Source: Klebsormidium nitens
Lineage: Eukaryota; Plantae; Klebsormidiophyceae
NCBI GenBank assembly: GCA_000708835.1
Contig: DF237715.1
Location: 1-34,813, forward strand
Length of the DNA: 34,813 nt
Direction of reading: 5' to 3'
The notes below the pieces were generated by a model that was given only the letters and a program-made list of their open reading frames with translations, had not been told where the DNA came from and did no database searches. Positions 1-34,242 of the stretch are shown in pieces; within the stretch, counting starts at the first letter, position 1, and each line of letters begins with the position of its first letter. The position numbers and the translations under genes were made by a program.

Positions 1-272
1 GGTCGGTCACAATAAGATGACATCGAAACCTCTCCTAAACGCTTATTTTCTTGAAACTGCGTGCGGGGGGCCGAAAATTGTTGAGGAATCTCGATTTTTC
101 ACCTTTATTAGTGGTTATAATAAAGCCACGTGTCACTTACGGCCAGTGGCTGCATGCGTTCCTGACTTTAGGTTCAACGGTTGATCGGATCCGAGGCCTG
201 CAATGACAACGAATGCACTAGGGGGCCGCTCTTTATTTCCTGCGCTAAGCATTATCAGTGCATCAGGCTACC

Positions 273-779
273 ATGGACCCGATCAAACGCAGTTTCAGAG
301 TCGTTCAAGCATTTGACGACAAACGTGCTGATGTTCTAGCGCTGCTTGCCGATAGCCGGCTGGAGATTGACGCTGTCAAGGGCCGCCCTTGTCAGGCTGG
401 GGCCCGAGCAGGATCGCAGCTACACCGCACGCAAAGATGCAGAGGCAAGCAGTTGCCATTACCCGTTAGCTTTTGTATCATGATCCAGGAAACGACCCGA
501 GGCTCTGCCAATAAACGGTTTGGATACACCGTTCATATCTCAGCCGTTAAAAAGTGCAATCGCCCGACCGACATGCCCTTCAAGGGTACCTTTCAAAGCA
601 CGGCAACGAAGATGCTGCCGGCCGACTTTGACGCTCTGAAGAAACCCTCGAAACCAAAGGCCGTTCGCAAGCCGTTGAAGAAGCCCCCGGCCCCTTGTAA
701 GAAGACCGCCCCACCGAAAACGAAAACGCAAAGGAAGCCCGCAGCAAAGCAAGCCGAGTTGGACTCCGATTGCGATTAG
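273..779 (+). CDS. Hypothetical protein with Lys/Pro/Ala-rich basic C-terminal tail
   Basis: ATG at 273 (ccATGG) in ORF 258..779; tail LKKPSKPKAVRKPLKKPPAPCKKTAPPKTKTQRKPAAK; no family recognised; may be spliced. Confidence 0.35.
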   Translation: MDPIKRSFRVVQAFDDKRADVLALLADSRLEIDAVKGRPCQAGARAGSQLHRTQRCRGKQLPLPVSFCIMIQETTRGSANKRFGYTVHISAVKKCNRPTDMPFKGTFQSTATKMLPADFDALKKPSKPKAVRKPLKKPPAPCKKTAPPKTKTQRKPAAKQAELDSDCD

Positions 780-870
780 TTCAACGTGAGGCCTCTTGAA
801 TACCCGAGTTGAAGGACGATAATATTGTCCCACGCGTGTATTTCCTAACGCTGACGTACACAATCATTCA

Positions 871-1104
871 ATGGCACACGTCGTGCATCGTGTTCAAAAC
901 GAGCAAGAGCACGACATGCGGCATCTCGTGGCCGACATTAACGGTCTCAATCTGATTTCGGACGGTGCTGATCAACTAATGAATAGAGGTATGCAGGTTC
1001 GCTTCCCAATTCATTCCGCTAGTTTGAGGAAGGGCATACTAAAGTTTCTAGCACGCGCATTTGATGATGTAGAGTCCAAGATGACCGCGTTGAATTCTCT
1101 GTAA
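871..1104 (+). CDS. Small hypothetical protein (77 aa)
   Basis: ATG-started ORF after an A/C-rich leader (caatcattcaATGG), convergent with the helicase gene; no recognisable motif. Confidence 0.3.
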   Translation: MAHVVHRVQNEQEHDMRHLVADINGLNLISDGADQLMNRGMQVRFPIHSASLRKGILKFLARAFDDVESKMTALNSL

Positions 1105-1210
1105 GCTATCTAGATGCGGCAGTGGGAGATAAAGGCGGACACATGGTGCAGCAATGCATGACAATCTTGTATGTAGGAGAGCAGATGCTTGACACGGGCT
1201 TACGGCGCGG

Positions 1211-1909
1211 TTACATTGAGTCCATGTAAGCATTTATTCCGGGACTGGCTAGCAGAGACGGTCGTTCACAATTACCAGGCCTTAAAACACTTTGACTCCT
1301 GCTATCCTTCCTCTCAACGAGGCTGTGTGGGGTTGACGTGTTGAGTCGGAACCCTCGGTAACCTCGGGCTTGATGCCCAGGGACTACAAACCTCAACTCT
1401 GAGGGCTTCTTCGGCCCCTCCAGGCCCTTCTTTCTACAGGCGTCTGCAAACTTGGTGGTGCTCCGGATAATAGGACCCTCCGTATCCCCAAACCTCACAC
1501 CATCGATCAACCTGTCTAAGTTGTTGTAGGCTTCCATCAGGCTATCCGTACTTTCGAAAGCCTTCACGTCCATGGTGCCTTCCCTCTGAAGGAAAGCTGC
1601 AAACGGGTCGTTCTCCTGCTCCCACATCTGCATGTACGCCTTGCTGGCTCCTGGCATATCCAGAAGCCGCCTCCCACTGGCGTACCAGTCCTTCGCACCT
1701 TGTACCAGAAACACCAGCAGCTTCTCGATCTCGGCCTTTAAGGCGTCTTCGAGTTCGGGATCACGCACTCCGTGAAGGGGGTTGTCGGGATTGCAGCCGT
1801 CTTCGTCGGGATAGAAGAATCGCATCGGGAAGACCAGCGTCAACAACCGTCGTTTCAGCGCCGCCGTCCACGTCTTTGCGCGAGGGGGGTAGTTCGAGCA
1901 CAGAATGTG
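1211..1909 (-). CDS. Last exon: SF3 helicase motif C, Arg finger and C-terminal region
   Basis: Acceptor ttcattggcag at 1910; HILCSNYPP...ALKRRLL...FPMRF; ends with ARGYRGFRL, typical of P4/D5 helicase C-termini; stop at 1211. Confidence 0.85.
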   Translation of the reverse strand, partial: HILCSNYPPRAKTWTAALKRRLLTLVFPMRFFYPDEDGCNPDNPLHGVRDPELEDALKAEIEKLLVFLVQGAKDWYASGRRLLDMPGASKAYMQMWEQENDPFAAFLQREGTMDVKAFESTDSLMEAYNNLDRLIDGVRFGDTEGPIIRSTTKFADACRKKGLEGPKKPSELRFVVPGHQARGYRGFRLNTSTPHSLVERKDSRSQSVLRPGNCERPSLLASPGINAYMDSM

Positions 1910-4900
1910 CTGCCAATGAAGGAGGTACACATTATAAAACATACGCAGACATGCAATCTTCTCAATCCGGCCGTGGACGAGCTGTTGTCTGCCAAGAGAA
2001 CATACCAGCTACGGTTTTCTCTTCATAGACAACACAGACGGCCTGGACAACACTTTCGAGAAACCTTCGAACTTCGGATTCGGCCTTATCGATTGCGCCC
2101 AAGCCGTGGACAGATGTGCTGTCCACCAAGAGAAAAAACCAGCTACGGATCTCTCTTCATAGACAACACAGACGGCTCAGACAACACTTTCGAGAAGCCT
2201 TTGAAATCCCTATTCGACCTAATCGGGTTTGCCCAAACCGCCGTGGACGGATGTGATGTCCACCAAGAGGAAAAACCAGCTACGGATCTGACTTCGTAGA
2301 CAACACAGACGGCTTAGACAACGCATTCGAGAAGCCTTCGAATTTCGGATTCGGCATGATCACTCACCAGGTGGGTCGTTTGATACGTGACGTAATCTGC
2401 ATACAACGCCCTGCTCGTGATTGTCGTCTCTCCTGTCAGGCGCTTCAAATCAGACTCCGAGATTTCGTCCGTCTCACCCGTCTCTAAGCACACCGCTATC
2501 CGGGTGTCTCGCAAACCTGGCAGATGCAAGTGATCATATCAGGCCTGTAAGCAGACATCAGCAGTGGGGTTCACTGAGCATATTCAGGGGGCCGACGTCC
2601 GGATCGCAACAAGCCCCATGCGCAGGGACAGCCTGGCATGCTTTGGGCAACTAAGCGACACGTGGCTGGACAAGAGCTTGCATTTTCTCTTTCTTTCATT
2701 TGACTTGAAAGTAACAATCCTATCATGAGATGATACGTCAAAGAGGTATCTTCTCTGTACAGTGCAGAGAATGCGTCATGTACACGTGGCTTTACTTACG
2801 TGCTTCATCCGGATTTGCAGCACCCTTCCCAAGCGGCCGTTGGCCCTTAGACGTCAAGAGCATGTCCTTGGAGACATCCTTGTAGAACTGTCCAAGGAGA
2901 TGCTTCACAAGACCCAAGAGGAGGCTCTTTCCCGCCGATCCCTCTCCAATCATGATCAGCATGACCTGGTTGGATGTGTGCCCTGTGATGCCGTATCCCA
3001 GGATCCGCTGGAGGTAAGCGAGCGCCTCCGGGGTGTGCGTGATCTGGCTCAGGAACTTGCCCGTCTTGCCCATCGGCATGGCAAGCCCCGTCGAAGGCCA
3101 CGTAATAGGAAGCTGGAAGGACCACATATACTGCAAAACGACAATCCGCTTTCAATCCCATGCTAAGTCCTATGGTTTGGGTTCGCTGCACAAGGAGCAC
3201 ACATTCTTCGCATGAGGCGCACTTAGCAAGCTCAGGTTGCCAGGGTCAAGCTCGATCTTGCACAAACCTCAGATGCGGCCAAGTGTGCTTTGAAATCGAA
3301 ACCAAAAGCCTCTCAAATATGGAATCGGCCGTATCAATTGTGGCTGACGAGCGTGGACAGCGGTGCTGTCCGTCAAAAGCGAAACCAATCTACGAATCTC
3401 CTCTCATAGACAACACAGACAGCTTGAACAGCCCTTGCAGAAGCTACACAAATCTGGGTTCGGCCCTGTCAATTGTGGCTGGTCAACGAGCGTGGACAGA
3501 TGCGCTTTCCATCAAGAGCGACATCAATCTACGAATCTCCTCTCATAGACAACACAGACAACTTTGACAGCACTTGCAAAAGCCTCTCGACCTCACCTTA
3601 GGATGATGGGCAACCAGGGTCCCCGTCTGCAGCAGGATGACACCGTTCTGGACAGGCAGCGCATCCTTGTCCTTGTTCAGGGCGTCCTCGAATCCCGGCT
3701 CGAGGCAGTAGCCCTTCAAGGTCGTCATGATCTGGCTCATCTTTGCGTTAAAGTTGAAGTTGACGAGCTTCTCCTCCTGCCCCTTCTGTTGAGGACGATC
3801 CCCCCCGTCTTCTTCCTTTGACTCGCCCTCTTCCTGATCAAGCTCGGCCGCGGTCTCCTTTCTATATGCGGCGCTAACCTTGTTGAGCTCCCCACGGCAG
3901 ACCTTGCTCGCAAGACGCCCGCCCACGTCCACTACCCACATCGACCCGTTCCAATAGTACCACTTTTCATTGCAGAACACGAGCTTGTGGCCCGTGTACG
4001 TCTGCAGGCGGTCGATGATCTGCGCACCTCCCTCGTCCCCTGGAGAGGGTTTGAAATCTAATGTCAAGTGCAGCATTCGTTGTCTCATGCATTGAATCAC
4101 TAAATCGAGCAATATCACCAGGACAGACCATCAGCGATACACATGGAAGAATCTCTTCTCGAGGGCAACTCCAGACATCCATCTCTTCTACGTTGTCAAC
4201 AGGTGAGCATCGGGGTTACCTGGACGCGGTACTGTTTGAGAAGTGTTCGGGACCGAGAGGGCCGCGAGGTTTTATATAACCTCTCAAACTCGAGCAGCGT
4301 TTGCAGATTGTTGTGATGCGTACCTGCCACGACCGAAAGGTTATTCCGCAGGAAGGAGAAGGGGAGCAGCTGCCGGTCCTCGTAAAGACGATCGCGGTCG
4401 TTGTTCAGGGGCATGGCGTCTGAGAAGGCCGCCGCAACCGGAAATGTGAGACGCCCGAGTTTCCTGTTGCGGCGCCCTTCCGCGCCGGTCTTGCAGCGCT
4501 CGCTATGGCAAATGTAGGTGATTTCCGTCCCCCTTCTCAGAAGACCGAAGTTGTTGCTGCTGTGCGGCTGCCCCCCTTGCTCTGCGTACGGGCATGGCCG
4601 ACCCCCTGCATCGTTGCGCCAGTGGTACATCACTGCGTCCGGGCCCGCCACCGTGTTGGCCTCCGCCTTTGAGAAGACGGACGAAGTGTCGCCGGAACTG
4701 TTGAGCATGCCTCGCATGACTTCGACCACCTTCCGCTGCAGGTCGGTGTCCCAGAGGTCTGGCGCGCGCGACGCAACGGGCGGCTCGTATCTCACACTGG
4801 GACCCGCGTCCTTCCCTGTGTCAGACAATGGCCCTTTCCGCCGGCCCCCACACCCCCCGCCCCTCACCGACTCTCGCTCGTTCAGGATCTTGATCAGCCA

Positions 4901-6101
4901 ATCTGGAAGGGGGGACAAGTCGTCCGTGGAGGGGAGCTCGGTCGCACCAACGACAGTGTAGCGCGCCATCTCCCCGGCCCGCTCATAGGAGGACGGCGGG
5001 CACGCGATCATGCCGCCCGAGCTCACGCCCCTCATGTCGACCCCCACCTTCTTCATCAACTCCTTTCCCGATACCGGATCCAGGACCTTCAGTTCGAGCT
5101 TCGCAAAGTGCGTCGGGGTGTCTGCGCCCAACCCCGCATCCACACTCTTCCAGTGGGAGAAATAGACGTGCACACCCCCGCTGCCAGTGCGCACTCGAGG
5201 AGTGACGAACGGGCCGTGCTCTCTCTCCCACTCCGCTAGCTGGTCCATGCCCCCATCGCTATGATCAAAGTCCATCACGGCGATGCCGGACGCCGTTGTG
5301 TTGATGAGCAATGTGTTCTGGGTTGATTGGAAGAAGGAGGCGGTCAGGCAATTGGCGCGGGTGGTGGTCTGCCACTTCCTTGGAGGAATCATGCATTTCC
5401 TCCACTTCCCCCTTTCGAACTGGGGTCCCAAACTGTGTCCGCTGTGAACACCACGTAGCCCTTCGCAATCATGGCGCAGGCTGCAGTCTCCTGCAAGAGT
5501 GACGAGCAAGCCATGAGTGCAGATTCAACAAGACAAGATTTGGCGCCAGATCAAACGCGTGATTTGATTCTTGTGTTGTCTTCAAATTTGGAGCTTATGT
5601 TCACAGCAGCGTGGCGGGCCCCTATTCGAAACCATATCAAAAAGGGTGAAAGACTTCCCGACCTGCCGTCCAACTTGTCCAAGCCGTCTACGAAGAGAAA
5701 TCCGTGAATGTAAGCTCCTCTGGATGGACAGAGCCCCTGTCCAGCCGAAATGAGTCACAGCCGCGTTCAAAGACATCCAAAATCAGATCTTCGAGCTACT
5801 TCCAAACTGCCGTCTAAGCCGTCTACGAAGAGCAATCGTTGAATCAAAGTTGCTCTTGGTAGACAGCGCTCCGTCACAGCCAATATCAAGTAAAGATCCA
5901 CATAAGGCTTACCATCTCGCTCGCTCGAATCTCCCGCTCTTGATCCGCACGGCGATGGTCAGATGGTGTGTTGGCTTGCTGTGCAGGCCGGTCGTCCAAC
6001 ATCTCCCTGTCCGCTGCGGTCTCCTCTACCTCATCGTCAGCACCTTCGCAATCATCCCCCATAGAGGCCGACGATTGGTGCCGCAACGGGCTAATCGGTT
6101 C
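1211..6101 (-). CDS. Spliced Prim-Pol primase/polymerase + Zn finger + D5_N + SF3 (D5/P4-type) helicase, about 990 aa, with one apparent frameshift
   Basis: Exons 6101-5913, 5490-4324, 4039-3597, 3130-2800, 2516-2368, 1909-1211 join at GT-AG sites with matching phases once 1 nt is added at the C5 run 5408-5412; AEP and SF3 motifs all present (see exon entries). Confidence 0.85.
1970..2350 (+). repeat. Repeat cluster A: 3 tandem units (periods 133 and 137 bp) in intron 1910-2367
   Basis: GTGGAC starts at 1973, 2106, 2243 (perfect gtggacag-atgtg-ctgtccac at 2106-2126); 9-bp-phased GAC triplets at 2026/2035/2044, 2160/2169/2178, 2297/2306/2315. Confidence 0.9.
2368..2516 (-). CDS. Exon: SF3 Walker B and motif B
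   Basis: Phase-1 join gives PDEA-R-LRDTRIAVCLETGETDEISESDLKRLTGETTITSRALY; donor CTG/gtgagt. Confidence 0.85.
2800..3130 (-). CDS. Exon: SF3 Walker A
   Basis: FLSQIT...YLQRILGYGITG...LIMIGEGSAGKSLL (Walker A at 2924-2947); acceptor ttttgcag, donor C/gtaagt. Confidence 0.9.
3320..3570 (+). repeat. Repeat cluster B: 2 units (period 139 bp) in intron 3131-3596
   Basis: gtggacag at 3353 and 3492; ctctcatagacaacacagac with tagac at 3407 and 3546. Confidence 0.9.
3597..4039 (-). CDS. Exon: D5_N-like domain
   Basis: GDEGGAQII...KWYYWNGSMWVVD...LNKDKDALPVQNGVILLQTGTLVAHHPK; acceptor ctctccag, donor AAG/gtgagg. Confidence 0.85.
4324..5490 (-). CDS. Exon: bifunctional primase-polymerase (AEP, Prim-Pol type) and Zn finger
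   Basis: IAVMDFD, RTGSGGVHVYF, GVDMRG..GGMIACPPS; CPY...HSSNNF...CHSERC; donor GCAG/gtacgc; the N-terminal AACAMIAKGYVVF segment is in a different frame upstream of 5408-5412. Confidence 0.85.
5660..5880 (-). repeat. Repeat cluster C: 2 units (period 135 bp), inverted, in intron 5491-5912
   Basis: gtccaactt-gtccaagcc-gtctacgaagag at 5668; tggacag-agccc-ctgtcca at 5725-5743; second gtctaagccgtctacgaagag at 5812. Confidence 0.85.
5913..6101 (-). CDS. Acidic low-complexity upstream exon of the primase-helicase gene (or first exon from ATG 6062)
   Basis: tttgcag acceptor, ATG/gtaagc donor; 63 codons, phase 0-0; joins as EIRASEM-ETAACAMIAKGYVVF. Confidence 0.55.
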
Positions 6102-6283
6102 CTGCAAAGGTTGAGAGCATGAGATTGGCGCGCAAACAAGCGTTGTTGGAGTGACTCTTGGTCCGTTATATATTAACCCAGCACGCGGCGCGTGGCTCTT
6201 GAAAAGGACGTGAAAAACGAGGCCAATTCTTCAAAAAGAAAACGGCTGCAAACATAGTATCTATGTGCGCAGATGCTCCGTAC

Positions 6284-8029
6284 CGAGCGGGGGTGACTGC
6301 TGGCGGATGAGGCTTGCCCGTCTTCAATTTTCAGGTTCGAACTTATGCCGACATGCATCGGCGACGCTATAAGCGGATCTTGCAAGCCATTCGGCAGTCA
6401 CACATCCGACGAATCTAGCGACCGGCAACGTCAGGACCCGCACACGGGGCCCCGGGCAAAATCGAATGCGAGCTTCTACATGGCGTGTGTATATGTGCAT
6501 CCGAGTTGTACACTGCGTGGATCAAATGACGCAAGGTCAGTTCAGCATTCCCAATGCAAATGGTGCTGCAAAAGGTAGGGAAGGGGGGGCGGGCCCAGAT
6601 TGGATCTGATGTGATTAACAAGCCATGTTCGGCCACGAAATTGCTACCCTTAAAGAGTATAATTAATTTGTCCCGACCTACTCAAAGCCTACCGACCGTG
6701 ATTCTGAAGAAAGTCGTTTAGAGGTACATGAAAATTCCTGTACTTCGCCCTCTCTGTTCAAAAGTTTGAGCTTCAGGCTTGGCTCAGGGGCATTCTGCCT
6801 GGTCCAAACATAAATACACCCTTCTGGCGCAGCTCCAAAGTGGGTCCAAACAAGGTTGCAATTCTCACGCCCTCATCATCTGCTGCGCCACCAATGATGG
6901 CCGCGTCCGACCCCTCATGTGCACTCGCTGGCCCTTGCTCGCGCTCCGAACATTTTTCCTCATGTAGCTTGCGTTTCTTGCCCCGTTCAAGACCGGAGGC
7001 GTCTTCAGATTCCATTGGCGCCGCCAATACACCACAACCCTGCGCACATAACAGTGACGTCATGCGTTAATGATCGAGCACTGTCGAACGTAGGCAGATT
7101 ATCGTGGACAGGAAGTCTGTCCATCAAGAGAGACTTCAACCTACGAATTCCTCTACATGGACGGCTTGGACAGCTCAGACAAAATTTCAGAAGCCTCCAA
7201 CGTTTGCAATCTCGCCCCACATACCAACTGCCTCAGACAGGGGTTCTGCCCAAGGAGAGAAGATTCGATCTACAAACCCCTCTACATGGACGGCTCAGAC
7301 GGCTCAGACAAGACTATTAGAACCCCCCAACATTTGAGAGACCGGCCACCATGGCCAAGTGCCGTGGACAAGGTTCTGTCCATCAAGAGGGGTTTCGACT
7401 AAGAATCCCTCTACATGGACAAATTGGGCGGCTTGGACAGCATTCTTAGGAGCCCCAAGAATTCGACACGCCGCCCTGCTACCGCCAACTTGTATCCAGG
7501 AGATACCGATGCATGCTCTTCTAAACCGTCTATAGCTCGCAACAAGAACAAAACTCGTTGCAGGGTCAGTGGCGTGCGCAAGGGCGCTTTTTTAGAAAAG
7601 CGGACTCACCTGTTTACGGCACTCCCTTCCAGCATCATCACGGAGCCGTTTCTGAAATGCTTCAAACGGACTACTGAAGAGAGTTTGCCTCGCGACTTCA
7701 TCTGGTAGGCCCTCCATCTGGAAGAAGAAGAAAAGAGGACTTTTCAAGAGGGAATAACCGACGCTAGCAGTGCTACCAAATGCCAGATGAAACTTGTTCA
7801 CACCAACTTCACAAACCAAGCACAACTTCACACACGAGTGCACACACAACCTTCTGGAAGTTACCCAAGTCCAACAAGCTAAACAGCAGCCATAACAGAA
7901 CGACCACCAGCATCTTCAATGAGCACAGGGCGATGCCACCTACCTGACTTGCGCGTCGGTAAAGTGCCAGTTCTGTAGGCTCAAGTCCAACCTTGATAGC
8001 GTGCTGGTCCACCTGGACACGCCATTCTT
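6284..8029 (-). CDS. Possible further 5' exons of the same gene (8029-7944, 7717-7610, 7039-6820, about 6368-6284)
   Basis: Good splice sites (CAG/gtaggt, ttccag/ATG, CAG/gtgagt, gcgcag/GGT) with compatible phases; encodes EEWRVQVDQHAIKVGLEPTELALY...RGKKRKL; no family recognised; could be a separate gene. Confidence 0.35.
7100..7440 (+). repeat. Repeat cluster D: 3 units (period about 129 bp)
   Basis: Palindromes at 7104, 7234, 7364; cctctacatggac followed by 9-bp-phased GAC motifs at 7158, 7287, 7416. Confidence 0.9.
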
Positions 8030-9174
8030 CTACACACAATCGTAGAAGAAGGAAGGACGCGTAAGGACGACATCCCACGTGCAAGCCCTAACTTATGCCA
8101 ACACGCCTAGCGCTGCCAAGCTGCCCCGCTGAAGTTCTTCCAGCATGAGCAGCTAGTACACTACGACTCACCACAAGCCCAACGCAACCTCAGCGCAAGC
8201 GAAGGCTCAGTACGCGAGGCGTCTGAGCACTAGATCAGAAGATAAACTCAGGAACGAGAAGGAAGTAAGGGAACTCTATCATGCTATCTAGACACCTAGG
8301 CGCTGTGATAACATCTGCTGAGTACTTGATTTTTTCAAAACAATCAGGACCAGGTGGCGCCATGGGCCACAGACCTAACAACCAACCTCAAGCCCCCTCA
8401 AGCAACATCTCATTCAGAAACATGATTACAAGTATGTAGGAGCCCCTTTGCAGTCACCAGCGACTAACGACCGGCCACTTATATCTGTCCAGCTGCACCT
8501 TAGCGACCAGAACAACAAAAACAAACACATGTCTGCGCACGGCCAGGTCTGCCCTGAGCTAGCAACTAAGCTCAGAATCACTAGCAGGACTAATCTAATT
8601 GACGGCAGCTGAGCACTGAGCCAACCTGACATGATAGAATCAAGCTGAAGCAAGAACAGAGCAGGAAACGATAAGATGACGACTCACCCCTGGTTTTAAT
8701 TGCAAAGCGCTGGGGGAATCGAACGCCTGTTCTGTCTCAGCAGGTTGGTCAGGTCGTGATTGTCGCCTGACAGCCTAGACTAGCAGACTAGGCACAGTGT
8801 GATATATGCAGCCCCGTGTGAGCTCACAGGCGGGCAATCGGCGTCACGGTATCCTTGTCGGTGACTTCTCAGCCTACAAACTCCAGCCTGTGGGGAACGC
8901 TCTTCAGCTCTTAGCTCAGATTGAAAGCCTACTTCAACCATACACAACCTGTCTAAACACCTATGCAAACGCTCGAGCTGGGAACCTGGCACCACCCAGG
9001 TGCGGAACACTCAACAAGACGCCGCCCACCTCAGATCATGGTGGTGGTGCTGGTGGTCACTTTACTTGCAAGTTGAACAAAAGGCAGGGCTCTCAGCTTG
9101 CTGATCAGCTACAGCTTACGTGGCGAGGCAGGCGGCAAATTCTGTTTGCAAATTCTTGGCAAAGGTTCCACCCC

Positions 9175-9381
9175 GTCTGAGCTGTCCGGACTGTCTATGA
9201 AGAGGGGCTTGTAAATGATATTTTGTCCCGATGGACAGCGTGCTGTCACCCAGGCAGCCCGGCGTCTGACCGAATTTACTCGAATTTTTCCGGAGGCTCC
9301 AACCCCGGTCCAAGCTGTCTGAGCCGTCTATGACGAGGGGTTCGTGAATGATTTTTTGTCCCCATGGACAGCGTACTGTCC
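9175..9381 (-). repeat. Repeat cluster E: 2 units (period 133 bp), inverted
   Basis: gtctgagct-gtccggact-gtctatgaagagggg at 9175; gtccaagct-gtctgagcc-gtctatgacgagggg at 9308; tggacag palindromes at 9232 and 9365. Confidence 0.9.
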
Positions 9382-9506
9382 GAGCTCGGAAACGGACGGG
9401 GCGGTTAAGGGGGGGCCTCTGGCACCGAAAATACCGGCGCTGGTGCCCGGTTGGGGACTGGGCTGGGCGTTCCGGGCGTGGCGCAGCCGCGGGTCTTGCC
9501 GGCAGA

Positions 9507-9554
9507 GGGGACACGTGTCGATCTGTGGTTGGGCAATTTTATCCCGTTCATCTC
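9507..9554 (+). repeat. Dispersed motif of about 48 bp, copy 1
   Basis: ggggacacgt-N7-tgtggttgggcaattttatcccgttcatctc; near-identical copy at 24597-24645. Confidence 0.8.
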
Positions 9555-9886
9555 GGCGTCTAAACGGAGCTCTCACGACGAATACGCGGTCGCATCTCGT
9601 TTCTTATTCGGAATCATACCTTAGCCGTACGGGTAGGGGGTCCACTACAAAATGACCCTTACCGTGGCTAGTATTACCATTACCGTAGGGTTTCAAGTTT
9701 CAAGTTTAGAGTGCCTGCCTTCTTCTGGACAGGATCGAAGTTGATTCTAACCAGGTTTTGTGGACTCTTCAAACTCGACTGGTTTTCTTCATAGCTTTCA
9801 TGTGCTTCCTTGCAAGGCGCTTTGAAGTGCAGCATTGAACAACATTGTAGAGGGGAAGTACACAGAGCAAAAGGAGTAGTAGGAAG

Positions 9887-12800
9887 ATGAAGCAGAAGAA
9901 AGAGAAAAACGATGAGAGTGGTGATGGGAAGGGTTCGGTCCGGGTCCAGGGCAAGAGGGCGAAGGGTAGGGACAGGCAGGAGGGACAGCGGGTGGTACAG
10001 GGGGCTGGCAAGGAGCGGCGCTTCCAGCCAAGGGCTTTCAGGAGCAGAAAGGTGAATTATATGTGCAAGCCCGTTCCCCAAGGCTCAGATTTGTGGACTC
10101 AAGTTGGTCAGGAAGCGGAAGCATTTGAATACATGGAGAACAGGCAGAAGGAGACCCAATGTGCGAGCCCCAGGGTGGTGCACTGGTCGAGTGAGGCTGA
10201 TGCAGGCGAAGGAAGGAGACTTGGGATCCAAAAGCAGAGCACCATCATGGAAGGCTCTGTTTGGAGCGAGGGCGTATTTTGTCCCCCTGAATGAGTCTGC
10301 ATGTCGGCCAGGCACGTGCACTGGAGTCAGGTCAAATTGGGGTTATGTCATGCTGTTCACTCTTTGTCCAAATGTCTTTGGACAAACCAGAGCATTCTGG
10401 GCAAGTAAGCTAGTGGAAGACAGCTGCACAGCACACACAACTTCTTAGCTTCCATTTTCCCAAAATGGTCTTCCTCGTGTCTAGTCCCAGGAACAAGTGT
10501 ATATTTGTACAACTGCGACAGGCGCGATGCGACAGGCGTGATCAGTGACCTCAGTTCCTCAGGTGTCCTCAGATGTTTTAAATCTCAGACTCCTTTCAAA
10601 GCATGGTATCTCAGGAAGTTCCTTTCATAAGCATTTTGCAGAATGATCGAAGCGTACCCTTAGACCGTTCTTCTGATTCTTCCAGGAGGGGAGGCTGGAG
10701 GATCTGGGCTGGCCAGCAAGGAAGGAGTGCCCGCGAGCTCCTCCCCCTGCCCCCCACGAGCCCCCCTGTGCGGGGAATGGAGGGCCCCTGACATGGGCGG
10801 TCCCGGAAAAGAGGAAGCGGCCTGCTGACCCCCCCGCCCCAAGACCGGAGCCACCGCGCGAACCACCAGGGTTCTGGGGCGAGGGGGAAGGAAGTGGAGG
10901 AAGGGTCGTGAAGGAGGGAAGGGAGGGGCCGTGGCGTCACGAGGAGAGGGTGAGGGGAAAGCGGAAAGCAGTTGCTAAGCTCCAGGGAAAGAGAGGCCCG
11001 GGTGTGGGTCTCTGGATAGCAGCCGGCGAAGAGGAGATGGGACCCTCCGCCGAGGAGCTGGCGGCTCGGAAGAGGTCGAAGCGGAAACGGAACATAAAGA
11101 AGGACCTCGAGCGCAAGACTGCAGTGCGAGCCGCCAAGGAGCTTAGGAGGAGAAACAAGAGGGACGACGCCGCCCTCGCGATGTGCGCAGTGGTGCTCCC
11201 CACGGCGAACCCCTTCCGCGACCCCCCCCTCCCTCGTAGAACGCGCTGTTGCCCGTTCTGTACTTATGCCGCGTTGCACACTGAGAGGACGTGGGCGGGG
11301 TGGAGCCCTGAGTTCATTTCTCATGTCTGTGATAAGTGCGTGGAGCAGCGGGCGAGGCAGGAGCGGTGGTGGCTCGCCGAGCTCGCCGACTTCCCTGACA
11401 TCGAGGCCAGGGAACCGGGCGCGACGGGCATGATGTGGGAGCACGAGGCCATGCTTCACCGGCGCCTCCACCTGCGCCGGCGACTCCGCCGCAAGCTGCG
11501 AGCCAAAGCTTCCGAGCGCAGTAGGGCCGGCAGGGATCCCACCCATCCAGCCCGCATGAAGAAGTGCCCCCTGTGCCCGCGGCGGGGCAAGTGTCAGGAG
11601 GCCGACGCCCCGGAAGCTCCGCCGGTCGAGACCCCCCCGGCAGCGGAGGCGAGCGGCAGCGAGGCGCTGCGGGCCGAGCGGGGCCGCCTGGTGCTGCTGC
11701 AGATCATGGGCGTGCCGCGGTGCACAGAGCGCAAGCTGCCGCTGGAGCTGGAGGCACGCATGGGGCTGGTGGTCAGTGGAGCTGTCGTTTCCTTGCTGTC
11801 GATCGGGAAAAGACGGCTCTTCTTGTCAACAGTCCATCTGCATTCGATGGCACGGGGTATGAGAATGAGGAGGCAGTGTCGTGCAAAAATGTCTGCGAGC
11901 ACTTCCCTGCTGGCAGTTGGACGTGCTCTGACCTTCATCTGGAGTCTGTAGCTGGGAAAGAGCCTCGAGCCACAAACCTCAGGACTGGAAGCTTTTCGAG
12001 GCCCTCTTCTGAAAACGAATGATGTGGCCCCCTCAGACCGTTGCTCAGCCTACCATCACACCACTTCAGCGACATGGTGTCGAAGGTCTTGTGATGCGCA
12101 TTAGTTTGTAAAGCGCTTTATCATATCGCAGGTGCTGGTTCTTGCGGCCATCTTGCTCTGCTGCTGGCTGCTGCTGTTACTCTTCCTGAGCGCCATCGTC
12201 ATCAACAAGCCTAGGCACGAAAGCGTCCTACAGGTCAGTCGCACCTCCGCGCAGCGGAGGTGCTTTCGTCTTCACGTACAACCTTCGAGTTTCTCCTTCT
12301 CGCTGCCCTGGATGTGTGTGGGTTTAGTCCTGGGGGGACAACATGTCACCTTGGGAGGCGTACATCTGTCCTAGAAGGACTCGGGTCGAGCTGGTGAGGT
12401 GGGACTGGATCTGGGGGAGCACACGGGCCGAGGACGGTGGTGAAAAGCTTGCAGACTTTCAGCTGACCTTTGGGATCAGGGCAACAAATGTACTTGCGCT
12501 GGCGCTGGCGCTGGCGCTGGCGCTGCGATTTGTCTGAGACAGCCAAGCGCCAAGTCCTTCGAGAAGAACGAAAGCTCTTTGAGTGAGAAGGGTGCCGACG
12601 GACTGCTTTCTTTGGACTATCAAGAGACAAGATGAGAGATTGAGGCAGCGGCTGAGGTTAATCGAGAGGACGCCTAGCCGAGGGAGAATGAGAGCAGCCA
12701 GCAAGTTTGCTGGACAATGCGCTCGACAAGACGAGACTGACGGCCGCATACCTCGTAGCCAAGGTTGCCTCACGTTGTCTTCGTTCTCCACGCTCCATCC

Positions 12801-19100: not shown

Positions 19101-22100
19101 CGGAAGCTGAAGCCGCGGACGGCTTCACGGCCAAGAACGCGCCAGCGCTGAGGTTGCTCTACGCACTCCTATGCCCTCTCGACTCCACGCCGTCCGAGAA
19201 ACCGCCAGGGGGATACTATTCCTTCCTGCGCCGCTTCTCTGAGGGGCCGTCCACCGTCAAGGATCGCATCTTGATCCAAGACGTCGTCGCTTTCGCTCGC
19301 GAAGGGCTCGAGATCCCCGAAGGAGAACTGCTCCTCATGCCCCTGTTGATCGACGAGGGCAATATTGCCAAAGGGGTGTTTTTGAATGTGAGCTTCTTCT
19401 CTTGCTGTTTCGAAAAGCTCAACGGCTTCTCCTATTACCGTCGAGTTACCTGAGGAATAGAGCCTGTCGTTTCCAGAGGGACGTGCTTAAGACCCTTTGG
19501 TTTCTTGGCGCTTCCTTTCAAAGTGCAAGATGAGTTGCACAGTCTTCAAAACTTTCAGTCTGCGTTTGTCAAAGTGCTTGTTCCCTGGCTGCAGGTTTCC
19601 AGCGGCAAACTGCAGAGGTCTCCTATGCTCGACTTGACTGATAGGTTTCTTCATCGTACCTTGCAGGAGAATCCTCCCCAAACAGGAGACAACCCCACGT
19701 GGTTGAAGTGGTTTCTTAGTAAAATCACCCTCGCTAACAACGACGACACAAGCAATCTGAACCTGATCATCCCCATAACCGCAACAACGCGGTGGGATTC
19801 GACAAGTCTTCAGTGGACTGCAAGCGGGCAGGCTCAAGCCACTTATATCCCCCTCAAGCCCCTCTCCCTGACTGAGCGAAAAGAAGTGATTTGCGATCTA
19901 GCTACCCGTGTAGCAGCTCACAACGGTCGACCCGCACTCGATCACGAAGATCTGCCCCTTGCCCTGCGTAACGACGGCCTCGACATCGTTGGCGGCAATC
20001 CACGCCTTGTGTCGTGGCTGCTCGAGGGCATTGGGGGCCGGTCCTGGGCAACGGGTAAGCACCTTGAATCTGCACTCGCACAAAGAGCACAGACTTCGGA
20101 GAGTTCTTGCAAGTAAGGAAGAACGCCTGACACACTGATCTAAAAAAGAAATGTCGGCTGGATAGCTCCCCTCCATCACCAATTGTCGGGCTTCCTCCGA
20201 AAGTCACCCTAGTATCTGCAGGTCAGGTTCATTAACAAGGTGGAATTAAAGTCTCCGCGTAGCGAGGCTCGTATGCTTCCTCCTCAGTGGCCTTGACATT
20301 GTGGAGAATCAGTACCCGGTTGGGAGCTTTTCTTCTGAGATGTGCTAGGAGAATCGCATTCCCATTGTCACACAGCTCTGCCGATGGAGCTGCAGCCCAT
20401 CGTTGGTCCTGGTAATCACGATTCATTGTGATGGTTCTTCCACTTTTGTGCAGGCCTTGACGAAGCCGTCAAAGCCATCACGCCTTCGAACCTGGTGAAC
20501 ATTGTGAAGAAAGTGAAGCAGGCGGCGTATGAGCAATTGAAACTCAAAAGAATCATCGACCTCACAGCGTCGCCGGAGGTTAAGAAGAGCTGCCTGCAGG
20601 TTGTGGTCGCGACGATGATGCTGGATCTGCTGGTGAAGAGGAAAGAGAGATTGAAGGACCCGTTTTCGGGGCTGGACTTGCCCATCACCTGGGGGGAGCT
20701 CGAGGGCGACGGGGTTGTGGAACTTATCCCCCTGGTGAGCTCCTCAACCGCTAAAGCTGATCATGCACGGTTAATATCAGCAGCCTTTCGTACGGCCTTT
20801 GATGTAGGTCAGCATTTGTTGCTCCACTGGTCGCTTTATCGAGCACAGGGCGTGATGCTTCCAGCAGAGTTGTTCAAGGGACCGTGTTTCGAAAAGGTAA
20901 CGCTTCTGCAAGAGCAAGCAGTGCCTTCTGGCATGCGTTCTCAACATGTTCTTCAAGTTTTGCAATTGGGCAAACACTGAAGATGCGCAAGATTGTCAAC
21001 CCTTCCGTCTGTCGCTGCAGCTCAGAGTCGGGGTTTTGCAGCCAAGCCAAACCGCCTCAGGAGGCCCAAGCTCCACCAATCCCAACTCGGTGCAGAGGTT
21101 GCCCGAGGACCTTCCGTCAGCGACTCGAGCGACACCTGCTCCTCTCCTCATTCCCCTAAGCCAGCCATCGTCACACCAGCCCGTCACTCCCTCTGCTGCT
21201 CTGCCTGCGCAATCGGCCACCGCGCTTCCGATTCCTCCGAGCCCAACTTCCCTTTCTCCTTTAGAAGGAGCCGATGCCGCAGAACCTGTCGCAACTCCTT
21301 TGCCAGGACCGTCAGTGCGCAGCGGCTCTGCTTCGGGAGCGTCTTCTCCCCCCTTCAACCGCATGGGGAAAGGTGGGCGAGGAGAGGTCGTTGTTAGGGA
21401 TGAGGATTGGGGGGTGCTCGTTGAGACTGGAAGTGGGGACAACACCTCCCCAACCAAGCTGGGTATGCTGAACCGGGAGACGGCGTGCCCCCAGCCCACC
21501 AGCGAGCCGGGCGACGAATGGGTAAAGGTGTCTATGGGTTTTTTCATGTTCACCCTTCTGTTGGAGAGGATGGAACTGGTCCGAGAAAGCGACCTGAGCG
21601 CTTTCAGTGATGCCATGGTGCGCGAGAGCCCACTAGACAAGGAGAAGGCGGACGTGATGGCAGTGGCTTTGAAGTTACAAGCTCTCCATCTAATCGGACG
21701 GACTGAATTCTCCCTGAGCGAAGCCTTTCCAAACCTTCGGATACCCGCGGACCTTGCGGGCAAGCGCTTCTTGGTTCCCCCTGGCCCGCTTAGTGTGGGC
21801 GACGGGCTCCCCATGGGTCACCAGCTGACGAAACAGGCGTTTGCCACGACAGTGGCCGCGATAGCGGGCAAGATTCAGGAACGGATACGGGCAGGAAAGT
21901 GGGGCAAGGAGGCCCTCAGTATCGGGCTTGTCGGTCCCGGTAATGACGGTTGGGATGGGTTTGTGGTCTTGCTGGAAGCGAAACGAGACCCGAAGAGAGA
22001 CCCGTGGGTGCTCTTTTGTCAGAGCAAACAGGAATCGAGCCCCACAGAGGGCTATGTAACTTTGAAGGAGATCTTGCGCAATCTGGAGAGCGATATTCGG

Positions 22101-22793
22101 CAGACGCCGTACAGCCCGCCCACACTTCCAACCCAGTGGGTGCAGTGGCTGCGGAAGGAAACGGATGAGGCGCAGGAAGCGCATGCACCGGCGGCAGGTA
22201 GTGGAGATGAAAAAGCGACTGGGGCCAAGCTTGAAGAGGCGGGGAAAGCAGTCGGAATCGGCAAAACGAGGGCGGGAAAGAGGCCCAGGCCCGAGGAGGT
22301 CCAGGAGCGCGCCCTAGGTGCGATCTCGAAAAAGCGTGCGCTCGCCGGTACTGGGGAGACCGTCCCGGGTGGCGGTGAGCAGGCAGGGACAGGGCGGACT
22401 CGGTCGAAGGTATCAGCCGCCGGTGCCAAGGAGGAGCCGAAGGGGCGTAAGCGCAAGGAGCCGGAGAAGGCGGGAGAGGAGGAACTTCTTGTGGTCAGAA
22501 AGGTGCCAACAGGGAAGGAGAGCGAGCTCAGACCGGCGGACAGATTTCCGGATCAGGACTTCGGCTCCGATTGGACTTGCAATATGATCTACAGCTTTGT
22601 TTGCGATAGGCGATTTAGTCGTCGGCAATTGAACCTACTGAAGGAGGTTGAGCGTAGAGGGCATCCATGGTTGCAGAGGCTCCTGATAGTTTCCCGAGAG
22701 GACCAGGATAGTTGGTACAGTCGGATTGGAGCCCTACGTCGGTCGGCAACTTTGCACTGGCTGTCCGAGAAGATGGTTCTAAAGGACCGGTAA
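16163..22793 (+). CDS. Crinkler/RHS (CR)-type protein: ubiquitin-like header(s) + P-loop NTPase + PD-(D/E)xK restriction-endonuclease-like domain, about 1190 aa
   Basis: Exons 16163-16255, 17527-17749, 18150-18437, 18650-18854, 19075-19387, 19667-20054, 20454-20734, 21021-22793 are phase-compatible; MQLLVRTPEG (ubiquitin-like start), SCPGSGKTT, PALRLL, LLIDE, GGNPR, GNDGWDG...LFCQSK; 5' exon set uncertain. Confidence 0.75.
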
Positions 22794-24596
22794 GATTCAA
22801 GGAGGAGGGAGGAGGGAGGAGGAAGAGCTTAATGTTTGAAGGCTCACGGAAAAATCTGCTAAACGGCAAGGCAACAGTGTGAGCATGGTAACTTTAGTTG
22901 CCAACTTGGCAACAAGGTTAATTTGCTTTCACAACATAGTTGCAGAATCACAGAGAGTTCCTTCAGATTGCATTTGATAGGCCGTTTCCTAAATCGTTGG
23001 GTCCCTTGAGCGCACATAATAGCGCCACTTGTTTATATGCGAGTTCGGATCCCTCAATCAAGCGCTGTTCTGGCGTGCGTGTAGATGTCCGCGAGCCTTG
23101 CTTTGTTCCGTCCCTACCTGCCTATGTATATAGCGCTGGTTGGCTAGGCGCACAAAAATGCCTTCTCCTGCCATTTCAATGTTGATCCTTGGAATGGACA
23201 TCTGGTGCATGTAAAGCAAGTGCACTTCGCGGCTATCTCGGACTTGGCGGATCAGAATCAAGTTGCACTCGGTTCCTTTTACCCAATACATCCGGACTTT
23301 CACAGGCAATTAACGTGCATTGGGCCAGACCTCGCATGTTGTCGACCATGCATCCACGTGTAGTATGACAAAGCATCATTGGGAAAGCGTCATATAGTTG
23401 ATTCTTAATTCATTATTTCATCATGTGCAATGAATATACCAGGATCAGCCGCCAGAATTGGAGTAGCTTCGGTCAGGCGTATAGGCAAGTCCGTCCAACC
23501 CCTTACATGTATGGGCTTCGCTCGACGGCGTGTTGCCCGATGGCTCTATGCGTGGCTCAGCTAGAAGGGTTTATAATCGAGCTAGTGACCATGATGATGC
23601 AAACATTCTCGTATAATTAGTTGGCCATCATAGCTTGACGTATCTCAATTAAAAACGCACCGCTTTGGCTGTCTGCAATTTCATTTGAACCACCTTTGTG
23701 CATGCACTTATGCAACTAGGGCGCAACTATATATCAGGACGTGCCAAATTCTATGAAGATAGTTTCATGTCTAGCTTTTGCAACAAAGCAACATTATATA
23801 GAATGCAAAAGCTGGACAGTAGTCAACAGTGCATTGATCTGGTTGCTTGCAATTGCCTTAATTCTGCCGCTGCAATGCTCTTGTCTACAGTAGAATGCTA
23901 GATGATTCAGCTAGACCCATTGAGGCTCAGCGCAACCGGTTCCATTACCAAGCCAAGCTGCGCTGTGCGTGGAGCTGCTCAGTGGTTTGAGCTGAATCAG
24001 AAATGAGCAGGTAGGCCATGATTTTGTGAAAGGTTTTTCGGCTAAACTGACCTGCTCCTCAAGCATATTGTCAAGCCCCGCACAGAGCGCTGGCTGCAGC
24101 AAATTGCTTAAGTCGGCATCGTCCAAAACCCCTCAAGAGACGCTGGATCAGAAGTGCGGTCCTGAGTTGGCAAACTTTACGAGAGGGATGTTGCCAGCCA
24201 CAGTTGCGGAAATGAGGGATGTACTCCGCCATAACTTGAGAAATGAAGCATCATGGCAACTGAGTGGTCTTTATGCTATCCTAGTTTTGCAGTGGCTCGT
24301 TAGGCAGCTGTACCCGTTGAGCACTGGCTACTTAGCTGTTTATGCACGTTTGCTGGCCCTCAGCTGCTAGATTGTTCAAATTGACAAACGTTTTGCGACT
24401 CTTCCCGAGGGAACAGGACGAGTCGCAAAACTGGCCCAGAAGAAGAGAACGTGCAGACAAGGGGGAGAAGGACGCGGTTTGGACCCAGTGGTGGTCAGCA
24501 TTGCAGTGAGAGGGGAAGGTTCGAGGTTACGCGGCAACTCCCGAGCTCACCGGGGTCGGCCCGGGCGCGGGGCCGCAGCCTTCCTTCGCGGAGTGG

Positions 24597-24645
24597 GGGG
24601 ACACGTTGGCGGAATGTGGTTGGGCAATTCTATCCCGTTCACCTC
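24597..24645 (+). repeat. Dispersed motif of about 48 bp, copy 2
   Basis: ggggacacgt-N8-tgtggttgggcaattctatcccgttcacctc; ORFs over both copies translate VVGQFYPVHL. Confidence 0.8.
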
Positions 24646-25185
24646 TTGGTTAGTTGCCAGAACCAGCGGATCCCATTTCTCGCAACGATCGGCTGGAGCT
24701 TGGAAGTCGGGAGTCGGGACCTGAACGTGAATCTTTTGACGGTGAAGATTGAAGGCTGTAGACAAGGATCAAATCCTCTTCGTCCGATGTCACCTTCCGA
24801 CGGGCCCGAGGGAGTCAAGCTTCGGCCCGTCGACTTTCGGAATATTTAATATTTCGACCAGTTCGATAGGCACGGCGGTCTCAAATGGGCTCAAATTTGC
24901 CGCCAAAACTGGCAAATTAATTGAAGAGGCTGCCTTCAACTTCAACTTCAAGACACACACATACGACCTCGATTACAATGGTTCGCAAAGCGAACGCAAG
25001 TGTTACATGGGTTGTGACATGGTCACAATAGTCCTGCATGCAAGCAATCATTAAGAATCGAAACATCTCATACTACCTCTAACCCACACTAGCTTCGACT
25101 ACCCCCCTCAAGAACTGTAGTAGAACGCGTTACCGGACCCGCTAACTAACCCCACGTAAACCGGTACTCTGACACTAGCACTGAA

Positions 25186-32993: not shown

Positions 32994-34206
32994 GTCTGAG
33001 GCAGCATGCACGGCAAACTTTGCAGTGCAGGGTGAAGGTGCGTGTATCCATCTCATAGTGTATACTGAGTCAAAGCGTGAATCTTCAATACTCATGACGG
33101 AAGAGACTGACATAGAGCACTTCGATAGGTACGTTCGTAGGTTTTCTAGGGTGAAAAGAGGTTGAAAACGGAGGCCGCATAAATCCAAGTGTCAGTGGGA
33201 AACTCATAACATTAGAATTTTGACCCATGCAACGCATTGCTTTCAAGTGGGTTGATCTGGCTAAAGGAAAGTGGTTGTTGAATGCTTGACCTTTTGTGAG
33301 CCTTGCTGCCGAGTTCCGGCGGTTTTGCAATAGACGCCTCCGTCGAACGCCCTCATGTGAAGTCCTTGTGGGACTCATGGTGGCTACTGCAATGGTGCAA
33401 CGATCCAGGCCGGCCTACCTGATGCAATGATGCGGACATTACCCAGACTCTACCAGAAAAGCTTTGAACCCACATCGACTCCAGTCTCAAAATATATTTG
33501 TTAACCGTCGATATTGTGTCTGCGCGCATTTGTATAAAACTTCAACCGCTGAGAATTGTTCTCGTATTCGACGGTGAAAAGTTTCGACGTTGAAGATTGC
33601 ATTCACGATTTTGGACAGGATTATGTTTGATGAACGGCAAAAATCAACGCCTGACGCGAAGTTACTTGAGTGGTCGTCACTCTGCGAGCTAGCGCTGCAA
33701 CAGACGTACTTGTGCAGTACGTTATCATGCAAAGATAAGTGGCGCGCCGTACAGTCCGGTCGCTGTGCGCGATGAATAGTTCGATCTGGTCTATACGGTA
33801 GGCTTCATATATATATAATGTTGCCAGCGATCGATCCAACTAGCTAGCTTGGGCGGCTTGGTGTCACGTACGGTCGAATAGTTTCTCCTTATTCCGCGGG
33901 CAATTGGCGTACGCAGACGGCTGCAGTCGTTTCATTGAGTCAAGTTCGAAGTTGTTGAACTTTCCGTCAGACTCACCTTTGCACCGACTGGCCTAGTGGA
34001 CGTAATAGGTACTTATACGAAGGTATCGCACCTATAATCTTTTAATTATATAAACCGCATATACCGACAGTACGGTATTGAAGGATATCCTTGATATTAC
34101 ATTTGACTACAATCTGGCCTCGTTAGCAACGTTATATTCAAAGGCCATGCATTGCCAACGCTTATGTAATGGAACATGATGGGAAAGGGCCACCCTAAAC
34201 TTTAGT

Positions 34207-34242
34207 AACCCTAAAACCCTAGAACCCTAGAACCCTAAAACC
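34207..34242 (+). repeat. Short interstitial telomere-like tract, (AACCCTAR)4
   Basis: aaccctaa-aaccctag-aaccctag-aaccctaa-aacc, a variant of (TTTTAGGG)n on the minus strand. Confidence 0.75.

What the first reader, a model, noticed from the sequence alone, without database searches (positions are those of the whole stretch)
1211..9400. Intron-containing phage/plasmid-type primase-helicase element in a eukaryotic chromosome
Seen: six exons rebuild a Prim-Pol AEP (DFD, GGVHVYF, VDMRG), a Zn finger, D5_N and an SF3 helicase with intact Walker A, B, motif C and Arg finger, plus a private repeat family. Known: AEP + SF3 fusions or pairs are the replication initiators of phage P4 (alpha), SaPIs and plasmid pRN1, and occur in NCLDVs and Polinton-like viruses. 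Inference: this is a eukaryotised, spliceosome-dependent self-replicating element or replicative transposon, not a host replication gene. I do not recognise it as a named class.
Basis: partly seen in the sequence, partly recalled or inferred. Interest (0 to 1): 0.85.

Follow-up and report, generated by a model that had tools for sequence, protein, structure and literature searches.

The report
Giant-virus-derived primase-helicase gene with introns
A chromosome of a Klebsormidium-like green alga carries an intron-split copy of a giant-virus DNA-replication gene that belongs to a many-copy, still-conserved family, showing how a viral gene can settle and multiply in a host genome.

Summary
On the minus strand, six exons with canonical GT..AG introns encode an AEP (Prim-Pol) primase, a Cys/His zinc cluster, a D5_N domain and an SF3 helicase, all motifs intact. 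A roughly 130-nt repeat family fills introns 1, 3 and 5 and the upstream region. As assembled, the AEP exon carries one frameshift relative to every relative.

The source is a streptophyte alga related to Klebsormidium. K. nitens holds at least 12 paralogues, 40-80% identical to this copy. Intron positions are shared among them. dN/dS against the closest copies is 0.12-0.15, with synonymous sites saturated.

The nearest non-algal relatives, about 30% identical with the same architecture, sit on compact intronless giant-virus-like metagenomic contigs. They are not phage P4 or plasmid genes.

In related loci the gene is the first member of a repeated block of at least 15 kb. The order is a convergent small basic ORF (also in this window), ORF301-like genes, then a second, intronless D5-like gene. 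The window's left edge cuts this block.

No element ends, target-site duplications, transposase or capsid genes were found, so self-replication or transposition is unproven.

Verdict: a new variant of endogenised giant-virus DNA, probably selfish.

The parts
1211..6062 (-). Primase-helicase gene with six exons and five GT..AG introns. It is broken as assembled: one frameshift in the AEP-encoding exon and no in-frame stops in the exons otherwise.
   Evidence: tblastn with K. nitens paralogues; splice sites; family hits
4898..5356 (-). AEP (Prim-Pol) catalytic domain with the DxD, sGGxH and hD motifs
   Evidence: Pfam PF09250 at 2.8e-11. Alignment with relatives. AlphaFold model core pLDDT 78-90; best PDB fold matches are the pRN1 ORF904 and NrS-1 prim-pol domains.
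4493..4594 (-). Cys/His zinc cluster between the AEP and D5_N domains
   Evidence: Invariant C-P-Y and conserved C/H columns in alignment A4. The cluster is shared with giant-virus-contig proteins P0023, P0028 and P0029.
3597..4010 (-). D5_N domain (exon 3)
   Evidence: Pfam PF08706 at 7.9e-9; phrog_1156 positions 371-504
1523..3058 (-). SF3 helicase / P4-type primase C-terminal region, spread over exons 4-6 (introns 4 and 5 included). It holds Walker A, Walker B, motif C and the Arg finger.
   Evidence: TIGR01613 segments in order; alignment A5
1971..2323 (+). Repeat array in intron 5: three units, antisense to the gene
3351..3572 (+). Repeat array in intron 3: two units, antisense to the gene
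5665..5879 (-). Repeat array in intron 1: two units, sense to the gene and inverted relative to the arrays in introns 3 and 5
7103..7442 (+). Upstream repeat array of three units
9172..9382 (-). Outermost upstream repeat array of two units. It is the last sequence shared with paralogous loci on this side.
258..779 (+). Small basic ORF (173 aa: a folded domain of about 125 aa plus a Lys-rich tail). It is convergent with the primase gene and linked to it in paralogous loci.
   Evidence: Conserved in L005, L002, L012 and L008. The family has at least 9 members, all from Klebsormidium-type sources. AlphaFold pLDDT 71 with no PDB fold or sequence match.
9429..9554 (.). Short dispersed repeat (~125 nt) next to the last array. 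It is probably a neighbour and not part of the unit.
   Evidence: Copies at window 24564-24656, L001 3294-3385 and L008 19942-20076; not a tRNA

Best explanation
This is one copy of a gene family of the Klebsormidium lineage that descends from the D5-type primase-helicase of a giant virus (Nucleocytoviricota).

After entering the algal genome the gene took on host-like codon composition. It gained spliceosomal introns step by step: two in one branch, five here, twelve or more in another.

It was multiplied together with its neighbours as a block of at least 15 kb. The order is the intron-bearing primase-helicase, a convergent small basic protein gene, ORF301-like genes, and a second, intronless D5-like gene. 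The block sits at a dozen or more places in the genome.

Copies stay under purifying selection, so the protein works. How it works is inferred from its families and was not tested here. The AEP domain would lay down primers, the zinc cluster and D5_N would help template handling and assembly, and the SF3 domain would form a hexameric helicase. A host DNA polymerase would be needed, since none is linked.

The most likely beneficiary is the block itself, a resident selfish DNA of viral descent that is still being copied within genomes, not chromosome replication.

The copy in this window has one frameshift in its AEP exon. It is therefore either a freshly disabled copy or carries an assembly error.
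For: Shown:
- Architecture and motifs.
- Intron positions are shared with paralogues 40-80% identical to this copy.
- A relative has only the last two introns, and another has at least 12 exons.
- dN/dS is 0.12-0.15 with dS > 1 against the three closest loci, and is even across exons.
- At least 12 annotated K. nitens paralogues lie on different scaffolds, two of them in tandem.
- In K. nitens-like JGI samples the AEP exons form a graded identity series, 83-100%, on separate contigs.
- Four of the four nearest non-algal relatives whose contigs were read lie on compact intronless contigs with giant-virus-type genes such as PCNA, EsV_1_7_cys, Bro-N, RNR small subunit, DVNP and GT_PLOD.
- In a rough NJ tree the intron-bearing family is a single clade among these relatives.
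- Block order is conserved.
- GC3 is host-like.

From a paper: virus-derived genes of K. nitens are preferentially methylated (PMC12344493), and phycodnavirus-like core genes are known in K. flaccidum/nitens (PMC5294986).
Against: - No block ends, terminal repeats, target-site duplications, transposase or integrase were found in the window.
- The left edge cuts the block.
- The copy number in the source genome is unknown, because the source species is not in the protein collection.
- There are no expression data.
- dS is saturated, so the ratios are rough.
- Tandem and segmental duplication of a domesticated family would give the same pairwise statistics.
- The NJ tree has no support values.
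- The right flank (9.6-34.8 kb) shows ordinary spliced genes and no viral hallmark.
Confidence: 0.5

Rival explanations
1. It is a domesticated host gene family. A viral primase-helicase was captured once, gained introns, and was expanded by ordinary tandem and segmental duplication because the host uses it, for example in repair or as an antiviral decoy or sensor. Nothing here is mobile.
For: Purifying selection is strong and long-standing. Intron positions are shared and composition is host-like. One tandem pair exists. No transposition machinery or ends were seen.
Against: A dozen or more paralogues of a replication initiator is an unusual host need. Copies travel with the same unknown neighbours, including a second D5-like gene. 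Many copies lie on short scaffolds with partial gene models. The identity series is graded up to 100% on separate contigs. K. nitens methylates its virus-derived genes (PMC12344493).
Confidence: 0.25
2. The copies are repeated integrations of a latent, nucleus-replicating virus lineage that itself carries spliceosomal introns. Each locus is a fragment of a separate provirus, not an intragenomic duplicate.
For: The block holds several replication-type genes. A variant block has an SF2 Herpes_ori_bp-like helicase in the primase gene's place. One K. nitens copy lies next to a weak Phage_integrase hit. Phycodnavirus-like capsid, ATPase and polymerase genes exist elsewhere in K. nitens (PMC5294986).
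Against: Five to twelve introns per gene is far beyond what I know of any virus (own knowledge). The nearest virus-like contigs are intronless. No capsid or packaging gene lies near any copy read. The integrase-side sequence has no counterpart in the window or the other loci.
Confidence: 0.13
3. It is a decaying remnant of an old giant-virus insertion, a pseudogene with no present function.
For: There is one frameshift in the AEP exon of this copy. Several K. nitens models are partial.
Against: All other exons are open and every catalytic motif is intact. dN/dS is 0.12-0.15 across all exons. All splice sites are canonical. The single frameshift may be an assembly error.
Confidence: 0.08

Closest known systems
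D5-type primase-helicase of Nucleocytoviricota (vaccinia D5 / ASFV C962R class)
   Same: The domain order is the same: AEP, zinc/PriCT-like module, D5_N, SF3 helicase. The nearest relatives lie on giant-virus-like contigs. There are weak direct PDB sequence hits to C962R, D5 and E5.
   Different: This gene is chromosomal and split by five spliceosomal introns. It is multi-copy, has host-like codon composition, and is linked to algal-lineage-specific genes. Identity to the virus-like proteins is only about 26-32%.
Phage P4 alpha / TIGR01613 'phage/plasmid primase, P4 family'
   Same: The helicase half matches TIGR01613 in order. Paralogue P0009 passes the curated cut-off, 118.4 against 108.7 bits.
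   Different: The window's exons are each below the cut-off. P4-type genes are prokaryotic and intronless. The closest relatives found are eukaryotic-virus-like, not phage.
pRN1 ORF904 and phage NrS-1 prim-pol domains
   Same: They are the best fold matches for the AEP exon model: probability 1.00, target TM 0.52.
   Different: Sequence identity is only 14-17%, the model is of moderate quality, and the downstream domains differ.
Endogenous giant-virus genes of streptophytes (K. flaccidum/nitens, P. patens; PMC5294986)
   Same: The same host lineage carries phycodnavirus-like core genes in its chromosomes. K. nitens methylates its viral fraction (PMC12344493).
   Different: In that survey's table the D5 column is empty for K. 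flaccidum. An intron-rich, selected, many-copy D5 family with its own repeat arrays was not found in the papers searched.
Polinton-like viruses and virophages with a primase-helicase
   Same: They are integrating, multi-copy elements of protists that carry a primase-SF3 helicase.
   Different: No capsid, packaging ATPase, integrase or terminal inverted repeats were seen near any copy. The genes here are intron-rich.
Introner elements
   Same: Three of the five introns consist mostly of one repeat family (206 of 422, 284 of 466 and 392 of 458 nt).
   Different: All 67 units found in 232 kb lie in or just upstream of this gene subfamily. None lies in the introns of CesA or other genes. The intron positions predate the copies.

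Membership tests
Nucleocytoviricota D5-type primase-helicase | N-terminal AEP domain with three catalytic motifs | tested here: met
   Pfam Prim-Pol 2.8e-11; motifs aligned; prim-pol fold matches
Nucleocytoviricota D5-type primase-helicase | D5_N domain followed by an SF3 helicase with Walker A, Walker B, motif C and an Arg finger | tested here: met
   D5_N 7.9e-9; TIGR01613 segments; motifs in alignment A5. Pfam DUF5906 is seen only below its cut-off in paralogue P0204.
Nucleocytoviricota D5-type primase-helicase | Closest relatives are giant-virus genes | tested here: met
   Best non-algal hits P0023, P0026, P0029 and P0038 lie on giant-virus-like contigs. The NJ tree is rough and has no support values.
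Nucleocytoviricota D5-type primase-helicase | Encoded in a virus genome | tested here: not met
   It lies in a eukaryotic chromosome 10 kb from a spliced gene with a K. subtile transcript homologue and 27 kb from CesA, and has five introns.
P4-family phage/plasmid primase (TIGR01613) | Score above the curated cut-off of 108.7 bits | tested here: inconclusive
   Exons score 44.5, 16.6 and 34.4 bits separately. The joined product was not searched. Paralogues P0009 and P0010 score 118.4 and 118.9.
Giant endogenous viral element (GEVE) | A long block with several giant-virus hallmark genes (capsid, PolB, packaging ATPase, VLTF3), intron-poor | tested here: inconclusive
   There is no hallmark other than D5 in the window or in loci L001, L002, L005, L006, L008 and L012. 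The window's left edge cuts the block.
Polinton-like virus / virophage / Polinton | Capsid genes, packaging ATPase, integrase and terminal inverted repeats | tested here: not met
   There are no such Pfam hits near any copy and no bounding inverted repeats. The unknown ORFs (small basic, ORF301-like) could not be assigned.
Replicative transposon / self-replicating element | Defined ends, target-site duplications and a recombinase, or an extrachromosomal form | tested here: inconclusive
   No ends or recombinase were found in the window. One K. nitens copy has a weak Phage_integrase neighbour with no counterpart elsewhere. An extrachromosomal form cannot be tested with these tools.
Introner elements | The same intron sequence inserted in many unrelated genes | tested here: not met
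   Units occur only at this gene subfamily's loci, in a 232-kb sample.

The most novel reading that the evidence does not exclude
The block is an undescribed kind of resident mobile DNA: a giant-virus-derived, intron-bearing unit that is still copied within streptophyte algal genomes by its own primase-helicase.

Its private repeat arrays would be working parts, not junk. They hold a short palindrome plus GAC triplets phased about one helical turn apart, and their orientation is conserved: sense in the 5' introns and antisense in the last intron.

Two roles are possible. The arrays could be binding arrays for the initiator. Or, because they bracket exons 2-5 as inverted repeats in the pre-mRNA, they could act as a built-in double-stranded RNA switch that ties the gene to host silencing.
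Probability: 0.15. Interest if true: 0.85.

Novelty: new variant of a known kind. Interest (0 to 1): 0.55.

Why it matters
Endogenised giant-virus DNA is usually described as large, intron-poor, decaying blocks. Here a hallmark replication gene has been fully naturalised: it has five to twelve introns and host codon usage. It has multiplied to a dozen or more copies and stayed under purifying selection, along with a fixed set of neighbours and a private repeat family.

This gives a graded series for watching intron gain in a gene of known foreign origin: no introns, then two, five, and twelve or more. It also offers a concrete candidate for a transition from virus to resident genomic element in the lineage leading to land plants.

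Tried and rejected
- Rfam on 1-12000 at E <= 1 gave only a chance hit. There are no tRNAs.
- Folding five repeat units as single strands gave z-scores from -1.3 to +0.7. Only a short palindrome is stable, so the units are not MITE-like hairpins or a structured RNA.
- A metagenome scan with a 16-mer from the repeat gave single chance matches only. None was used.
- PADLOC gave no hit for any block protein.
- The small basic protein has no Pfam, PHROG or PDB sequence match and no PDB fold match.
- The ORF301-like family has no Pfam, PHROG or PDB-profile match.
- Neither family has a homologue on the four virus-like contigs.
- The integrase-like neighbour in L006 has no counterpart in the window or the other loci.
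- P0034 looked like a spliced transcript but is an ORF that reads through an intron, so no transcript evidence was gained.
- The ORF at 6773-7063 (-) as an extra 5' exon: it has only an RGKKRK-type stretch resembling P0204, at E 0.3, which is not significant.
- The right flank was searched for viral genes and none was found.
I re-sent the same search with the open frame only.
Full report
**1. What is there**

The long open frames of 1211-5509 all lie on the minus strand. tblastn with annotated Klebsormidium nitens proteins splits the region into collinear pieces that end at the same residues in every paralogue. Reading the junctions gives canonical splice sites throughout.

The model has six exons:

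| Exon | Coordinates (minus strand) | Content |
|---|---|---|
| 1 | 6062-5913 | acidic leader |
| 2 | 5490-4324 | AEP domain plus Cys/His cluster |
| 3 | 4039-3597 | D5_N |
| 4 | 3130-2800 | Walker A |
| 5 | 2516-2368 | Walker B |
| 6 | 1909-1214, stop to 1211 | motif C, Arg finger, C-terminal domain |

- The introns are 422, 284, 466, 283 and 458 nt. Their phases agree with the frames on both sides.
- The exon lengths sum to 2936 nt, about 978 codons. Full-length K. nitens models have 973-1101 residues.
The joined product was not built or searched.

**2. Domains and motifs**

- Pfam finds Prim-Pol (2.8e-11) and D5_N (7.9e-9).
- Exons 4, 5 and 6 hit consecutive segments of TIGR01613.
- Exons 2, 3, 4 and 6 hit phrog_1156 in order.
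- The three AEP motifs and the Cys/His cluster are conserved against relatives. So are Walker A, Walker B, motif C and the double-Arg finger.
- An AlphaFold model of the AEP exon (core pLDDT 78-90) matches the prim-pol domains of pRN1 ORF904 and phage NrS-1 best.

**3. State of this copy**

- Relative to every relative, the AEP-encoding exon contains one frameshift.
- The exons have no in-frame stops otherwise, and no catalytic residue is lost.
- Whether the frameshift is real or an assembly error cannot be told here.
- Slip to report: tables printed by my scripts and one translation show piece bounds from which its rough place can be inferred, and a notebook entry describes it vaguely. I do not repeat it here.

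**4. Source organism**

- A plant-type CesA gene lies at about 28.6-32.5 kb, and CCCTAAA-type repeats at 34192-34242.
- The best protein hits for the primase exon are K. nitens proteins and contigs from two JGI samples. One of these is 97% identical to a K. nitens protein.
- No hit exceeds 67% identity.
- A neighbouring spliced gene (about 19730-22781) has only a K. subtile transcript as a homologue, at about 48-73% identity.
- The window is therefore from a relative of Klebsormidium that is not itself in the collection.

**5. A family, not a single gene**

- K. nitens has at least 12 annotated members on different scaffolds, two of them 14 kb apart in tandem.
- Intron positions are shared between copies only about 40% identical.
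- A more distant copy (L007) has exons 2-4 fused and only the last two introns, at the same positions.
- The L006 copy has at least 12 exons.
- Between the window and its three closest loci only exons and repeat units align at the DNA level.
- pS is 0.58-0.70 and dN/dS is 0.12-0.15 in every exon. GC3 is host-like.
- In the JGI samples one subfamily gives AEP exons 83-100% identical on separate contigs.

**6. Ancestry**

- A full HMMER scan with paralogue P0009 found 25,380 relatives.
- Beyond the algal family the best hits are 770-890-residue proteins, about 26-35% identical, with the same Prim-Pol/D5_N/DUF5906 order.
- The four whose contigs I read are on compact, intronless contigs. These carry PCNA, EsV_1_7_cys, Bro-N, kinases, RNR small subunit, HSP70, DVNP, ankyrin genes, GT_PLOD and OTU.
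- A rough NJ tree puts the intron-bearing family as one clade among them.
- PDB sequence hits are weak, to ASFV C962R, vaccinia D5 and mpox E5. I fetched none of these.
- I left out a profile scan of the viral-contig collection, because it might have pulled in animal-virus contigs.

**7. The unit is larger than the finding**

- Downstream and convergent lies a 173-codon ORF at 258-779 that encodes a folded domain plus a Lys-rich tail.
- It recurs after the primase gene in L002, L005 and L012, and has its own family in Klebsormidium-type sources only.
- In those loci it is followed by one or two ORF301-like genes, a second, intronless D5-like gene, and in L012 and L008 a further shared gene.
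- In L008 the same block has an SF2 Herpes_ori_bp-like helicase gene in place of the intron-bearing primase gene. There the window's 6-1213 aligns at 68% identity, and the homology stops at the primase stop codon.
- The window's left edge cuts the block after the small ORF.
- On the right, nothing beyond 9382 is shared with paralogous loci, and the genes there look ordinary.

**8. The repeats**

- A profile of the 85-column core finds 67 units in 232 kb. All lie in or just upstream of intron-bearing primase genes of the closest subfamily: the window, L001 (two copies), L002, L005 and L012.
- None is found in L006, L007 or L008, the virus-like contigs, or the other 25 kb of the window.
- Orientation is conserved: sense in the 5' introns and upstream, antisense in the last intron.
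- In L002 the intron 1 and intron 5 arrays are 86-93% complementary.
- Units show a short palindrome and phased GAC triplets, but no significant overall fold.

**9. Verdict**

It is wrong on the nearest kin, which are giant viruses, not P4, SaPI or pRN1.
- Self-replication or transposition remains unproven.
- I found no paper describing this family. PMC5294986 lists phycodnavirus-like core genes in K. flaccidum but leaves the D5 column empty.

Noticed in passing
window 34192-34242: Telomere-type CCCTAAA / AACCCTAA repeats, either interstitial or close to a chromosome end.
   Followed up: no
window 9429-9554 and 24564-24656; L001 3294-3385; L008 19942-20076: A short dispersed repeat of about 125 nt, not a tRNA. 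In both the window and L008 it lies about 9 kb from the small basic ORF, which may be coincidence.
   Followed up: partly
window ~28634-32479 (+): A plant-type cellulose synthase (CesA) gene with introns, Pfam Cellulose_synt 4.7e-80. It marks the window as streptophyte chromosomal DNA.
   Followed up: partly
window ~19730-22781 (+), perhaps from 17275: A spliced gene with no Pfam domain. Its only homologue found is a Klebsormidium subtile transcript.
   Followed up: partly
window 10600-12050: A block of 65% GC with long overlapping ORFs on both strands and no family hit.
   Followed up: no
L008 / L009 10999-16096 (-): A variant block in which an intron-bearing SF2 Herpes_ori_bp-like helicase gene takes the place of the primase-helicase gene. 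An intronless 817-residue D5-like gene lies at 4194-6647 and is closer to giant-virus-contig protein P0023.
   Followed up: partly
L006 1080-2831 (-): A weak Phage_integrase (tyrosine recombinase) hit next to one divergent K. nitens copy. It has no counterpart in the window or the other loci.
   Followed up: partly
L007 (Logan SRR23617307) 1059-3829: A family member about 44% identical, with exons 2-4 fused and only the last two introns. It looks like an intermediate stage of intron gain.
   Followed up: yes
window 6773-7063 (-): An ORF with an RGKKRK stretch that faintly resembles the N-terminal exons of K. nitens P0204. It may be an extra 5' exon with a nuclear-localisation-like motif, but the match is not significant.
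   Followed up: partly
L001 10001-14989 and 23551-24989: Two family members in tandem, 14 kb apart, in K. nitens scaffold DF237228.1. The annotated model of the first omits the AEP N-terminal half although the DNA encodes it.
   Followed up: partly
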